Below are positions 38,995 to 43,383 of a DNA stretch of 64,000 bases, piece after piece. The first letter of the stretch is position 1. Every line of letters begins with the position of its first letter. The notes under the pieces are model-generated. The model searched no databases, had not been told where the DNA came from, and was given only the letters and a program-made list of their open reading frames with translations. The DNA comes from Ylistrum balloti (Eukaryota), in the NCBI RefSeq assembly GCF_031769215.1, contig NW_026782609.1, forward strand, positions 186,001 through 250,000, given 5' to 3'. Position numbers and translations under genes: made by a program.

Positions 38995-41900
38995 TTATCC
39001 CCAGTTGTCGGCAGCAGTGCCTCCCCACTCATCCATGGAAGAAGGAGGAGCAGAGGACTGTGCAACAACACTGCTTGCTGTACCAGTGGTGGGACCACCT
39101 GGGGCAGCTGCTGACCAGTCTTGGGCAGGTGAAGCAGACCAATCATCGGTGGCACCAAAGCCAGGAGTAGATGCTGGGGCAGTCACTGGAATAGCCTCAG
39201 CAGCCCAATCATTGATGCTTTCTGGCTGGGTAGGCATTGGCACCTGACTCTCGATCCATTGTTCCTGCTCATCCTTGGCAGCTGGGGCCTTCTCTACTGC
39301 CTGTTCTTCCTTGTCAGCCTACAAAAGCACAGTAAAGCCTTAATATTTTTTTCACTATCCTGTTATAAATTCTTACTCTAAGGGAACTAACTCTTAATAT
39401 ATTTTTCACAAAACCATCTCACACCTACTACAAATTTTAACATTCCATGCAGAATTCATGAAACACCTGTAACTAAATACATATTTGTTGAACTATGCCC
39501 TGGTCAAAAGTATATTAAATATTGTTAAATACACCATCATCTGAAGTACTGAAGTAATCTGTACTAGAAAGCTTACCTCTTCTGGATCCCTATAGAAGTA
39601 CAAATCAACCATGACCTCCCATGGGTGTTCACGGCTAATGGTGCCTCGCAGCCTCAGAACCTCACGAGCCAACAGCCACCACATAAGACCAATAGACTGG
39701 GGTCCCTACAATCAAAACAGATAACTGAATGTGTGAATGAAGTTGTCAGAAATACACCAATAACAGAATCATCGTTCAAGTAAACGCAGGAAATGTAAAA
39801 GTTTCACTGTTTTAATTCTGATAAGATATACAGTATAACTATTATTCTTTAATTGAATAGTTTACTACTCATGTTTACAAACCAAACTCAATGTGAAGAG
39901 CTAATAATTGTCTCTAACCTCAAATGATCCTTTCATTACACCAGAAACATTTTAAAACCTTATAACAATGAAAGGAGTTTTGAAGCCATATACTACACTC
40001 AATGACTATCAGAGAATAATTTGGCTTCCATAGATATCTAAAGGACTACCCTCTCCATCCAAAACAAGCATTTTACATTTTGGTCTAGATCCTTTAATTT
40101 TATGAATCTTTCATTTTGCTCAATGGATTTTAGATAGACATAAAAAAAAAAAACAAATGGCAGTGTGAAAGATATAAAATTTAACAACTTTATTTGGTCT
40201 TGAATGGGTCATTCAAAACTGCCTGAATCTTATTTTTTCTGCAAATTTGTTCTTTGTCCTGATTTTACGATGAAGTCTCTACCTACTCTCTCTCTTCCTG
40301 AATACTTTTTTATTGCTATCTTCATCGAAATCCAGGATTTCATATCTTTTACAAACATTCAAACATGAAAGAAGCATTACCTTGTTGTTGCATGGGATAG
40401 CAATGTCCACATGTCTGAGTGGCGAGTCAGTGTTACAAAGGGCAATGACAGGGATGTTGACGTAAGATGCCTCAGTTACTGGCTGGTGATCAGTACGTGG
40501 GTCGGTCACTACCAGGAGACGGGGCTCACGGAAGGCAGCCTGAAAAACAAGGAGGCAAGATAATCAATCATATTCATACAGCTCTGAAAAACACCAGGAG
40601 GTTATCACTGTGATAAAATGTGCTACTGCTATAGCTCATACTGAATACAACTGAAATCACAGACATTCTCTTCAATATTTTTTAAAATCCTTTTATGAAT
40701 TATTTGGAGTTCTATGTTCTTGTACAATTTGTTTAAACCAGGATGCAGAAATACAAAAAGTTTAACACTTTCTCACCAGGGTAAAGTTACATAGACATGA
40801 CCAAAACATCACGCTCACAAGAAAGTGACACCAGAGCCACCTCCGATGTATTCAGGAAATTACTACCAACAGCAACACAAATATACAATTTTGATCCTGG
40901 ATTTGGCATCACGGTGGACAGTAAAAGGCTTTGATCAATGATATATGCAATATGTATGAATACCTGCAATTTTTCTATTTTGATATAATGTGGTGATACA
41001 GCAGGATTTTAAGTACAGATGCAGGGAGGGAAGATTTTTCGTGTGGTTTTCATGTTTCTTCAAATGATTATACAGGGATACCACATGATACACATCATAC
41101 CACAACATTTATATTTGTGCAATACACAAGCCTATCAATTCTGTTATTAGCCGTGCAAAGGTGGTTACAGCCAAGAATAGAACATCTCTCCCCTCCCCCC
41201 CCCACCGACATTAATTTGATTTCAACATCTATATTTACCTGGATCTGATTGGTGAAAGTTCCAGGTGTGAATCTGCCAGCAATAGGTGTAGCACCAGTAG
41301 CAGAAGCAAACTTGAGAACAGCCCTCTGGCCATAAGGTCTGGCAGAAATCACACAAACATCTGCTGGGTTCTCAATAGCAGCGATGGCACGAGCTGCCAA
41401 CAATAGCTTCTCCCAAGTCTTTCTTAAATTGATGATGTGGACACCTGTAGAAAATGAGAGTTTCTGTGTGAATATCTATATTACTACTTGCTTCATCTGA
41501 ATAAACATTAAAACGATTAACATGTCCAACAATTCTTTCTCCAGCAACAGCAACGAAGCCATCACTATTGGAGTTTGTTGTAATGATGTTGCATTCATCC
41601 CTTCCTGATATGACCCACTTGATCTAGGCCAGCCGTACACAAGAATGCTTTACTTAGGTAACATTTTGGCAATCACTGAGAAATCTCTTTAGAGTATCAG
41701 ACATGGTATCAGAGAAGAGTGATGAAAAGGTTACAAAAAGTCTTTTACTGATTTCCAGTATAACAAACACAGATAACAACAGTAATCGTGGGTAGACAGA
41801 ATTATTTTTCTTTTCAAAGTGACTCCTGAAATATCTGATTATAGTAATACTTATTTTGGAACATTGTGTAGTCACTGAAATATCGCATTAATTTCTATTG

Positions 41901-43383
41901 GTTGTGTTTTAGAACTTTCATTCTACTGTAAGGTTAATTTTTGTGTGATTCTTGCTTTCACAATTGTATTTCAACTACATATACAGCTTCAGTGAAAATT
42001 TAGACCATAGTAGATAAAGTATTTACCATATCAAAGAATCTATCAATGTACTGATTCGGTTTTTGTGTGAACATCTATATTACTACTTACTTCATCTGAA
42101 TAAACATTACAACAATAAACATGTCCAACAATTCTTTCTCCAGCAACAGCAACGAAGCCATCACTATTGGAGTTTGTTGTAATGATGTTGCATTCATCCC
42201 TTCCTGATATGACCCACTTGATCTAGGCCAGCCGTACACAAGAATGCTTTACTTAGGTAATATTTTGGCAATCACTGAGAAATCTCTTTAGAGCATCAGA
42301 CACTGATGCCTCACTAACTGAAAGTACTCAGAAACATGAAGACACTGATTTTAACTTCAAGTTAAAAGTGATGTTCCTGATACGAGACCTTGTTTATAGT
42401 CTTCATTACAGACACTGGCATTCAATGATGAAATAACAATGGCAGCAAGTCAGACAGCTTACAGGCCTGTATATTACCCATTCCTCCCTATTTCAAGCAG
42501 GTTCAGTCAAAATTTAGTCCACAGTAGACAACGTATTTACCATATTGAAGGATTTAAATAACGTACCGATTCTTGGGAACATCCAAGTGAGGTAAGACAT
42601 AGAAAATTCACCAGTTTAATTAAAAAGTAACATTTGAAAAATATCTTTTTTTGCAAACCTGTACAGGTAGAGGATTTCACCAGGCAGCTACTTCACATTG
42701 ATAACACAGATATTGATCATGCAAAATTTTAAAATTCACTTGACCCACAAAAAAATTAGTCCAGCAAAAAATCCCATATTCTTTTACAGTATTATCTGAA
42801 GGAAACATAAAGTGTCAAAATTGTTTCATTCAACTGCACAGGTTTACATAAATGACATCTAATGTGACCATGAAGTGGTTCCTTTTCCTACAGAAAAATG
42901 TAGGTTGATGTTTTCAGCTATTATCCATCTCTAGCTTTCGCTAACTAAAAGCTGTTGGACACCCTTCCAAATGAAAATAACACAGATGAGGCTATTTCAG
43001 TATGGACAGATGTCATTTAATGTTGCATTCATCCCTTCCTGATATGACCCACTTGTTCTAGGCCAGCCGTACACAAGAATGCATTTCACCAGTATGCAAG
43101 ATATGTTTGTTTCTTTTTCAACCAGACCCTGCAGTTAGGCATCAGTTTCAATTTTACAGAAAGTTTTCTGTAAATAGATGTTTCTATCAATTTGTTTAAC
43201 AGATTAAAGACACAAGAACAAAATGTTAATATGAATGGATAAATACAAACCATCAGCCTTCCGCTTGAAGACATATTGCTCCATTTGGAAGTCAGTATTG
43301 TTTGCCCCAAGGTGGGTGCCACAAGCAAGGAATTTGGTAACATCTTCCTCTTTCAGGGTGAGTACATCTAAACCTCCGGACAT
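38995..43383 (-). CDS. RPSA: 40S ribosomal protein SA (uS2), 316 aa
   Basis: Exons 43383-43251, 41444-41239, 40539-40381, 39705-39577 and 39318-38995 join in frame (951 nt). [26 protein letters not shown]...[36 protein letters not shown]...[18 protein letters not shown]...YFYRDPEE, then a C-terminal tail with DWS repeats. AATAAA on - at 38901-38896. Confidence 0.98.
41520..41649 (-). ncRNA. Box H/ACA snoRNA copy A (RPSA intron 2)
   Basis: Hairpin GCATTC...GAATGC, H box ACATCA, second hairpin CAACAA...TTGTTG, ACA 3 nt from the end, about 130 nt, sense to the host gene. Pocket TGTGTA/AAGGG matches 18S CCCUU-U-G-UACACA. Confidence 0.85.
42119..42248 (-). ncRNA. Box H/ACA snoRNA copy B (RPSA intron 2), same sequence as copy A
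   Basis: Lies in a ~240-bp block (about 42064-42301) duplicated from about 41465-41702. The snoRNA body is unchanged while the flanks carry substitutions. Confidence 0.85.
42950..43083 (-). ncRNA. Box H/ACA snoRNA copy C (RPSA intron 2), same 5' hairpin, different 3' hairpin
   Basis: 5' hairpin differs from A/B by one loop base; H box ACATTA; 3' hairpin GACATC...GGTGTC followed by ACA-GCT. Confidence 0.8.

What the first reader, a model, noticed from the sequence alone, without database searches (positions are those of the whole stretch)
41520..43083. Three H/ACA snoRNAs in one RPSA intron, predicted to guide the 18S site equivalent to human Psi1692
In the 5' hairpin, pocket strands UGUGUA and AAGGG pair (6+5 bp) with the conserved 18S segment CCCUU-[U]G-UACACA. 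The 3' pocket starts exactly 14 nt before the H box, the canonical spacing. In human that uridine (Psi1692) is guided by the 3' hairpin of SNORA70, hosted in RPL10, whereas human RPSA hosts SNORA6 and SNORA62. Here the guide sits in a 5' hairpin, in a different host, and in three copies within a single intron. Metazoan intronic snoRNAs are usually one per intron.
Basis: partly seen in the sequence, partly recalled or inferred. Interest (0 to 1): 0.7.

Follow-up and report, generated by a model that had tools for sequence, protein, structure and literature searches.

The report
Three pseudouridine-guide snoRNAs in RPSA intron
The first coding intron of this (reportedly scallop) ribosomal-protein gene RPSA carries three copies of a small guide RNA gene that most likely directs a conserved pseudouridine in 18S ribosomal RNA; it is a new example of a well-known kind of gene, in an arrangement already known from flies and plants.

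Summary
On the minus strand, inside one 1,806-nt GT..AG intron of RPSA, lie three ~131-135-nt units with full box H/ACA layout (hairpin, H box, hairpin, ACA). Copies 1 and 2 are identical. Copy 3 shares only the 5' hairpin and has an unrelated 3' hairpin. These are the only copies in the genome.

The shared 5' pocket pairs 6+5 Watson-Crick bp around U1638 of this genome's own 18S rRNA, with the 3' guide strand starting 14 nt before the H box. U1638 sits in the same sequence context as human Psi1692. Only 22 of 1,000 shuffled pockets do as well.

Selection is visible. The duplicated c1/c2 block has 8 differences, none within the snoRNA (p=0.002).

The "unusual" parts are weak. Several snoRNAs in one intron are described for Drosophila and rice. 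Earlier unchecked notes of this scan report at least seven more such arrays on other DNA of this genome. Host-gene changes between phyla are normal for snoRNAs. No Rfam family matches.

Verdict: a probable new H/ACA snoRNA, a functional analogue of SNORA70; modest interest.

The parts
41445..43250 (-). RPSA intron 1 (1,806 nt, GT..AG, phase 1), host of all three units
   Evidence: Exon 1 and exon 2 translations and splice dinucleotides read. The intron position is conserved in the other animals' RPSA loci whose intron I printed.
43251..43383 (-). RPSA exon 1 coding part (ATG at 43383..43381; [15 protein letters not shown]...KRKAD, plus the first base of the Gly codon)
   Evidence: about 82% identical to exon 1 of other animals
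41239..41444 (-). RPSA exon 2 ([12 protein letters not shown]...TNQIQ)
   Evidence: 570 homologous exon ORFs carrying Pfam Ribosomal_S2
41520..41650 (-). snoRNA copy 1 (about 131 nt). Its predicted 3' end lies 74 nt upstream of the 3' splice site.
   Evidence: Fold; identical to copy 2 over 131/131 nt; weak full-length H/ACA-model alignment over 41522-41650
42119..42249 (-). snoRNA copy 2, identical to copy 1
42950..43084 (-). snoRNA copy 3: same 5' hairpin (63/65 nt), unrelated 3' hairpin. It starts 166 nt after the 5' splice site.
   Evidence: sub-threshold full-length alignments to SNORA35 and SNORA14 models over 42950-43084
41636..41641 (-). 5' guide strand UGUGUA of copy 1 (same element at 42235-42240 and 43070-43075); pairs with 18S 1640-1645
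41599..41603 (-). 3' guide strand AAGGG of copy 1 (same element at 42198-42202 and 43033-43037); pairs with 18S 1633-1637; starts 14 nt before the H box
41584..41589 (-). H box ACAUCA of copy 1 (copy 2: 42183-42188; copy 3: ACAUUA at 43018-43023)
   Evidence: ANANNA positions listed
41523..41525 (-). ACA box of copy 1 (copy 2: 42122-42124; copy 3: 42953-42955). It lies 1-2 nt after the 3' hairpin's lower stem.

Best explanation
These are three intron-encoded box H/ACA snoRNA genes of one lineage-restricted family. They are co-transcribed with RPSA pre-mRNA and released from the spliced intron.

Each would assemble with dyskerin, Nop10, Nhp2 and Gar1. The working guide is the 5' hairpin. Its pocket strands UGUGUA and AAGGG clamp 18S rRNA on both sides of U1638-G1639 (helix 28, the neck next to the decoding region). 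This places U1638 at the foot of the upper stem, 14-15 nt from the H box, where dyskerin converts it to pseudouridine. This is the site modified as Psi1692 in human 18S.

The 3' hairpins have no usable pocket: a 1x6-nt internal loop in copies 1 and 2, and a loop starting 18 nt from ACA in copy 3. They most likely serve only as the second protein-binding module and 3'-end determinant.

The array arose by local tandem duplication. Copy 3 keeps the guide hairpin joined to a different 3' hairpin.

Shown here: sequence, architecture, complementarity, uniqueness in the genome, and differential conservation. Inferred: expression, processing and the modification itself.
For: Architecture:
- The 5' hairpin has a 6-bp lower stem GCAUUC/GAAUGC, an open pocket and a 7-bp upper stem core.
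- The H box fits ANANNA.
- The 3' hairpins fold better than shuffles (z -2.1 for copies 1/2, z -3.0 for copy 3).
- ACA follows right after the stem in both unrelated 3' halves.

Target:
- 11 Watson-Crick bp flank U1638 of the genome's own 18S. This is the only rRNA site matched at 4 or more bp per side, and 22 of 1,000 pocket shuffles do as well.
- Human Psi1692 lies directly 5' of GUACACACCGCCCGU (bridging oligo in PMC9610020), the same context as U1638.

Selection:
- The c1/c2 244-nt block has 8 differences, all outside the 131-nt snoRNA (0/131 against 8/113, Fisher p=0.0018).
- Copy 3 matches copy 1 at 63/65 nt over exactly the 5' hairpin plus the start of the H box. Both flanks are at random identity, 12/50 and 10/46.

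Other:
- There are only three copies in 648 Mb, so this is not a transposon.
- The units are on the sense strand of a ribosomal-protein host, and copy 1 ends 74 nt before the 3' splice site.
Against: - There is no RNA evidence.
- No Rfam family reaches threshold. The best are SNORA35 at 17.6 bits and SNORA14 at 12 bits, against gathering scores of 36-39.
- No homologue was found in the RPSA intron 1 of the other animals whose loci cover that intron, so there is no cross-species covariation.
- The upper stem must be extended by a weak C16-G47 / G17-C44 / G18-U43 section to bring the pocket into the required register. That costs about 2.6 kcal/mol relative to the minimum-energy fold.
- With G-U pairs allowed, a match of this score is common among shuffled pockets (136 of 300).
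- The three copies are duplicates, so their shared structure counts as one observation, not three.
- 100% identity of c1 and c2 could reflect gene conversion.
Confidence: 0.55

Rival explanations
1. The units are real H/ACA snoRNAs, but the 5' pocket has a different substrate or none: an orphan guide, the neighbouring U1637, or a non-rRNA target. On this reading the match to the Psi1692-equivalent site is a coincidence.
For: - The minimum-energy fold leaves a larger pocket (11 and 14 nt) whose top does not abut the proposed guide strands.
- An alternative register gives 7+4 bp on U1637, with the guide starting 13 nt from the H box.
- Scoring that tolerates G-U pairs makes 11-bp-equivalent matches common.
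Against: - Under Watson-Crick-only scoring, the U1637/U1638 site is the only rRNA hit.
- The U1638 register has the canonical 14-15 nt spacing and falls on a uridine known to be modified in human.
- The apical loops carry no CAB box (UGAG) that would point to snRNA targets (sequence).
Confidence: 0.2
2. Only one copy is a working gene, most likely copy 1 at the canonical distance from the 3' splice site. The others are young duplicates that are not processed into stable RNA. Alternatively, the outer copies cap a longer snoRNA-ended intron RNA instead of yielding three separate snoRNAs.
For: - Exonucleolytic trimming of a debranched intron releases only what is protected. Several snoRNPs on one intron need extra endonucleolytic cuts; otherwise they leave a snoRNA-ended long RNA (established knowledge of sno-lncRNAs, not tested here).
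- Copy 3 has a 3' hairpin whose internal loop starts 18 nt from ACA, which is not canonical.
Against: - c1 and c2 are identical over 131 nt while their immediate flanks differ at 8 of 113 positions.
- The guide hairpin of copy 3 is kept at 63/65 nt amid unalignable sequence. This suggests that each copy is constrained or homogenised.
- Multi-copy intronic H/ACA clusters are expressed in Drosophila according to the literature cited in PMC2780460.
Confidence: 0.15
3. This is not a snoRNA at all. It is a locally duplicated piece of intron that happens to contain hairpins and ANANNA/ACA-like triplets.
For: - No Rfam hit and no orthologue were found.
- The whole-unit folding energy is not better than shuffles (z -0.65 to -1.1).
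- Tandem duplication in introns is common in this genome (notes s1-232054 and s1-232070; the D3 block).
Against: - Neutral duplication does not explain 0/131 against 8/113 differences.
- It does not explain the sharp 63-nt island of identity that coincides with one hairpin plus the H box.
- It does not explain two unrelated 3' halves that both form a hairpin followed directly by ACA.
- It does not explain a unique 11-bp bipartite match at canonical spacing to a known pseudouridylation site.
Confidence: 0.1

Closest known systems
Human SNORA70 (U70), Rfam RF00156, hosted in RPL10
   Same: It is a box H/ACA snoRNA reported to guide 18S Psi1692 (PMC13204842 table; PMC9610020). That site has the same sequence context as scallop U1638. 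It is intron-encoded in a ribosomal-protein gene.
   Different: - No detectable sequence or model similarity: RF00156 finds nothing in the window or the genome.
- The host is RPSA, not RPL10.
- The guide sits in the 5' hairpin.
- SNORA70 is listed with a second target, 18S 1232. No second pocket is evident here.
- There are three copies in one intron.
[quoted passage not shown] 2004 JMB; 2005 RNA) and rice intronic clusters (Liang et al. 2002)
   Same: Several H/ACA snoRNA genes, often isoforms of one guide, sit inside a single intron of a protein-coding host (as summarised in PMC2780460).
   Different: The phylum (mollusc) and the family differ. I could not read the original papers (PMC1370813 is not held), so details such as copy numbers and spacing were not compared.
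Drosophila snoRNA H1 = snoRNA:Psi18S-1820 (PMC12239590)
   Same: It is probably the fly guide for the same 18S position. The site lies 175 nt from the 3' end if fly 18S is 1,995 nt (my memory), against 175 nt in this 18S and 177 nt in human.
   Different: The equivalence of sites rests on my arithmetic and memory, not on a tool result. The fly host gene is, from memory, Nop60B/minifly, not RPSA. No sequence was available for comparison.
Vertebrate SNORA62 (E2) and SNORA6 in RPSA
   Same: They are H/ACA snoRNAs hosted in RPSA introns (PMC2850357: SNORA62 in intron 4; PMC4515611: the two share the host and probably arose by cis-duplication).
   Different: - Their targets differ (28S U3830/U3832 for SNORA62).
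- They lie in different introns, one per intron.
- No Rfam match to either was found anywhere in the scallop RPSA gene.

Membership tests
Box H/ACA snoRNA (class) | Hairpin-hinge-hairpin-tail layout of about 120-150 nt | tested here: met
   The folds of all three units give a 5' hairpin, a single-stranded hinge and a 3' hairpin. The units are 131-135 nt long.
Box H/ACA snoRNA (class) | H box ANANNA in the hinge, and ACA three nt from the 3' end just after the 3' hairpin | tested here: met
   The H box is ACAUCA (copies 1 and 2) or ACAUUA (copy 3), directly after the 5' lower stem. ACA lies 1-2 nt after the 3' lower stem. The true 3' end is not known without RNA data.
Box H/ACA snoRNA (class) | Pseudouridylation pocket with bipartite complementarity to a target, and the target U 14-16 nt from the box | tested here: met
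   The 5' pocket gives 6+5 Watson-Crick bp around 18S U1638, with the 3' guide strand starting 14 nt before the H box. This requires a weakly paired extension of the upper stem. The 3' hairpins do not meet this feature.
Box H/ACA snoRNA (class) | Stable RNA bound by dyskerin, Nop10, Nhp2 and Gar1 | not testable with these tools
Box H/ACA snoRNA (class) | Conservation of boxes, guides and stems (with covariation) in related species | tested here: inconclusive
   Paralogue comparison shows constraint. No orthologue was found in the RPSA loci of other, unnamed animals or in two metagenome pattern scans. No other scallop genome could be reached.
SNORA70 (Rfam RF00156) | Match to the family covariance model at or above 40 bits | tested here: not met
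   There was no match at E<=10 in the region and none in the whole genome (only 42 of about 35,590 first-look candidates were scored).
SNORA70 (Rfam RF00156) | Guide for the 18S uridine equivalent to human U1692 | tested here: met
   Predicted by complementarity only. The context is matched to the human site through PMC9610020. This shows functional analogy, not homology.

The most novel reading that the evidence does not exclude
Copy 3 is a working chimera: the same guide hairpin joined to an unrelated 3' hairpin. If so, H/ACA snoRNAs in this lineage evolve by exchanging whole hairpin modules inside an intronic array. The intron, capped by snoRNPs near both ends, may also yield a ~1.6-kb H/ACA-ended intron RNA alongside the three snoRNAs.
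Probability: 0.15. Interest if true: 0.45.

Novelty: new member of a known kind. Interest (0 to 1): 0.25.

Why it matters
If expressed, this adds an unannotated mollusc H/ACA snoRNA and assigns a guide to a conserved pseudouridine in the neck (helix 28) of the small subunit.

It also gives another case of the same rRNA site being served by non-homologous guides in different host genes in different phyla: RPL10 in human, RPSA here.

It adds to the picture that multi-copy intronic snoRNA arrays, known from flies and plants, are frequent in this mollusc genome. It opens no long-standing question. Its value is mainly for annotation and for studies of snoRNA turnover and duplication.

Tried and rejected
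1. Rfam. A gathering scan of the window and permissive scans of the intron, each unit and the rest of the gene gave no family. Only sub-threshold generic H/ACA alignments appeared (SNORA35, SNORA14), plus an antisense box C/D look-alike (snR75, 22.5 bits against 40) that I take for chance.

2. SNORA70 model on the whole genome: nothing, at limited sensitivity.

3. RNA evidence. The look-up of sequencing runs gave one run of unknown kind. It was counted, so nothing was laid.

4. Orthologues. I searched exon 1 and exon 2 separately, by reference. I used all 12 contig look-ups, which gave 23 loci from other, unnamed animals.
- Where the locus covers intron 1, it is about 88 to 3,300 nt long.
- None of the loci holds a BLAST-detectable homologue or a convincing guide pattern.
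- The pattern hits in L033 are a tandem repeat of the exon end plus splice donor, not a snoRNA.
- The joined (spliced) RPSA protein was deliberately not built or searched. Full-length annotated RPSA genes of other scallops were therefore out of reach, because of the length window of the word search.

5. Two metagenome pattern scans: no hits.

6. 3' hairpin targets. The best hit was 28S U3346 for copy 3, at 7+6 bp with 3 G-U pairs. It needs part of the upper stem to open and has a non-canonical spacer. Copies 1 and 2 have only a 1x6-nt loop. I rejected both as guides.

7. The D3 block: no convincing structure or boxes.

8. Homology between the two kinds of 3' half: not significant, with 93 of 1,000 shuffles scoring as well.

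9. A search of the genome with the Rfam SSU model failed twice for technical reasons. I replaced it with a pattern search plus cmscan on the fetched rDNA.
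Full report
WHAT IS THERE

The window's minus strand carries an RPSA (ribosomal protein SA) gene. Exon 1 (ATG at 43383, [45 protein letters not shown]) ends at 43251. Exon 2 ([29 protein letters not shown]...TNQIQ) runs 41444..41239. Between them lies a 1,806-nt GT..AG intron, 43250..41445. The same phase-1 intron position (GATG|GT ... AG|GT) is present in every other animal RPSA locus for which I printed this intron. Further exons lie at lower coordinates.

Inside this one intron, on the sense strand, are three related units:
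- c1 at 41650..41520
- c2 at 42249..42119
- c3 at 43084..42950

A DNA search of the whole 648-Mb assembly finds only these three. They are a local family, not a transposon. The genome is called a scallop in earlier notes of this scan. I did not verify that.

ANATOMY

All three units begin with the same 5' hairpin:
- a 6-bp lower stem, GCAUUC/GAAUGC
- an open internal loop
- a 7-bp upper-stem core, UGGCCUA/UGGGUCA, with a 7-nt apical loop

One nucleotide after the lower stem comes an ANANNA box: ACAUCA in c1 and c2, ACAUUA in c3.

In c1 and c2 a 3' hairpin follows. It has lower stem CAACAA/UUGUUG, then CUCCA/UGGAG and an 8-bp top, and ACA lies one nucleotide after the stem.

In c3 the 3' half is a different sequence. 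It also forms a hairpin (lower stem GACAUCU/GGGUGUC), with ACA two nucleotides after it. The 3' hairpins fold better than shuffles: z -2.1 (5 of 200 shuffles) and z -3.0 (2 of 200). The two kinds of 3' half are not significantly alignable (93 of 1,000 shuffles score as well).

Two unrelated sequences therefore supply the same architectural element at the same place. That is partly independent support for an H/ACA design.

Neither 3' hairpin has a usable pseudouridylation pocket. It is a 1x6-nt loop in c1 and c2, and a 4x4 loop starting 18 nt from ACA in c3. The rRNA scans for these hairpins gave nothing convincing.

TARGET

I took the rDNA of this genome (L005; 18S 727-2539, 5.8S, 28S). I then scanned all uridines with a snoGPS-like rule, allowing 8 positions for the end of the 5' guide strand and 5 for the start of the 3' guide strand.

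- UGUGUA pairs with 18S 1640-1645.
- AAGGG pairs with 18S 1633-1637.
- U1638 and G1639 stay free.
- The 3' guide strand starts 14 nt before the H box.

With Watson-Crick pairs only and at least 4 bp per side, this site is the only hit in 6,000 nt of rRNA. Its neighbouring register, U1637 with 7+4 bp and a 13-nt spacing, also appears. Only 22 of 1,000 shuffled pockets reach 11 bp.

With G-U pairs at half weight, 136 of 300 shuffles score as well. The pairing alone is therefore suggestive, not proof.

The register also needs the upper stem to be extended by C16-G47, G17-C44 and G18-U43 around a small internal loop. That costs about 2.6 kcal/mol against the free minimum-energy fold.

The site itself adds weight. 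The bridging oligo used to map human Psi1692 begins with GTACACACCGCCCGT directly 3' of the modified base (PMC9610020). That is the context of U1638. Psi1692 lies in helix 28 at the neck-head junction (PMC10227372).

SELECTION AMONG THE PARALOGUES

c1 and c2 sit in a 244-nt block that differs at 8 positions. All 8 lie outside the 131-nt snoRNA (0/131 against 8/113, Fisher p=0.0018). Beyond the block, identity is at chance level (profile).

c3 matches c1 at 63 of 65 positions. This stretch runs from the first base of the lower stem to the fourth base of the H box, and one of the two changes is in the apical loop. The sequence on both sides is at random identity (12/50 and 10/46).

An old duplication with everything decayed except one hairpin plus its box is what selection on a guide module predicts. 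Gene conversion limited to the functional unit would also fit.

WHAT I COULD NOT SHOW

- Expression. The look-up of sequencing runs returned a single run of unknown kind.
- Orthologues. I searched exon 1 and exon 2 separately by reference. The 23 loci I could fetch come from other, unnamed animals. Where they cover intron 1 it is about 88 to 3,300 nt long, and none contains a homologue. Two metagenome pattern scans were blank. The family may thus be restricted to the scallop lineage, but there is no cross-species covariation.
- Family assignment. No Rfam family matches. Only weak full-length alignments to generic H/ACA models appear (SNORA35 at 17.6 bits, SNORA14 at 12 bits), and their ends coincide with my boundaries. 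The SNORA70 model finds nothing in the genome.

COMPARISON WITH WHAT IS KNOWN

SNORA70, hosted in RPL10, is listed as the guide of 18S 1232 and 1692 (PMC13204842; PMC9610020). PMC7760958 gives SNORA64 for U1692 and SNORA70 for 28S U4975. Against the other two sources this looks like a swap.

SNORA62 lies in RPSA intron 4. SNORA62 and SNORA6 share that host in vertebrates (PMC2850357, PMC4515611).

The scallop units are a functional analogue of SNORA70, not a demonstrable homologue.

A different host is not surprising. The sponge SNORA62 sits in FAU and moves even within a genus (PMC4515611).

[quoted passage not shown] The one-per-intron rule is described as predominant, not absolute (PMC11028025).

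Drosophila snoRNA H1 is also called Psi18S-1820 (PMC12239590). By distance from the 3' end it probably serves the same site, but that rests on my memory of the fly 18S length.

Earlier notes of this scan, which I have not checked, report multi-copy snoRNA arrays in single introns of KANSL2, a nucleolin-like gene, ZC3H14, RPL10, RPL7, eIF3c and RPL14 of this same genome. They also report that the RPL10 array is E3/SNORA63-like. If those notes hold, the arrangement is routine here, and scallop RPL10 hosts a different guide from human RPL10.

VERDICT

The features offered as remarkable are ordinary for snoRNA evolution. This is a new member of a known kind, of modest interest. The most interesting residue is copy 3, a guide hairpin joined to a foreign 3' hairpin, together with the question of how three snoRNPs are released from one intron.

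Noticed in passing
window 41984-42042 and 42498-42556 (minus strand; homology extends to about 75 nt): This is a second duplicated block in the intron, one copy downstream of c2 and one downstream of c3. It is 83% identical while the surrounding spacer is at chance identity. No snoRNA boxes and only a weak common fold (-5.75 kcal/mol) were found. It is probably a remnant of the tandem duplication that made the array.
   Followed up: partly
L033 7133-7370 and 10100-10290 (RPSA intron 1 of another, unnamed animal): Both ends of this 3.3-kb intron hold tandem ~79-nt repeats that contain a copy of the end of exon 1 plus its GT donor (ttcaagcctgatg|gtgcgt...). It is the same kind of exon-end/splice-donor minisatellite that earlier notes describe in the DPF gene of this window.
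   Followed up: partly
window 42966-43044, plus strand (antisense to c3): There is a sub-threshold match to the box C/D family snR75 (22.5 bits against a gathering score of 40; E=0.005 in a 166-nt search). Only the D-box end recurs opposite c1. I take it for chance, because it is antisense to the host gene.
   Followed up: partly
L016 3862-4000 (138-nt RPSA intron 1 from NCBI assembly GCA_013332975.1): This short intron contains GCAUUC ... GAAUGC, the same lower-stem sequence as the scallop 5' hairpin. A small hairpin and ACAGCU follow, but the pocket sequences differ. It could be a compact H/ACA-like RNA or chance.
   Followed up: no
L018 about 186-290 (305-nt RPSA intron 1; the closest exon-2 relative, 98.5% identical): The intron has a possible box C/D-like stretch (AUGAUAU ... 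CUGA) and no H/ACA unit. Different animals may keep different snoRNAs in this intron.
   Followed up: no
G000:C1191:37288-37318: One rDNA-like copy carries TGAACACACC instead of TGTACACACC at the predicted guide-binding site. It is probably a degenerate rDNA copy.
   Followed up: no
Literature: PMC7760958 against PMC13204842 and PMC9610020: One paper assigns 18S U1692 to SNORA64 and 28S U4975 to SNORA70. The other two sources (one citing snoRNABase) give SNORA70 for 18S 1692. The first looks like a swap.
   Followed up: partly
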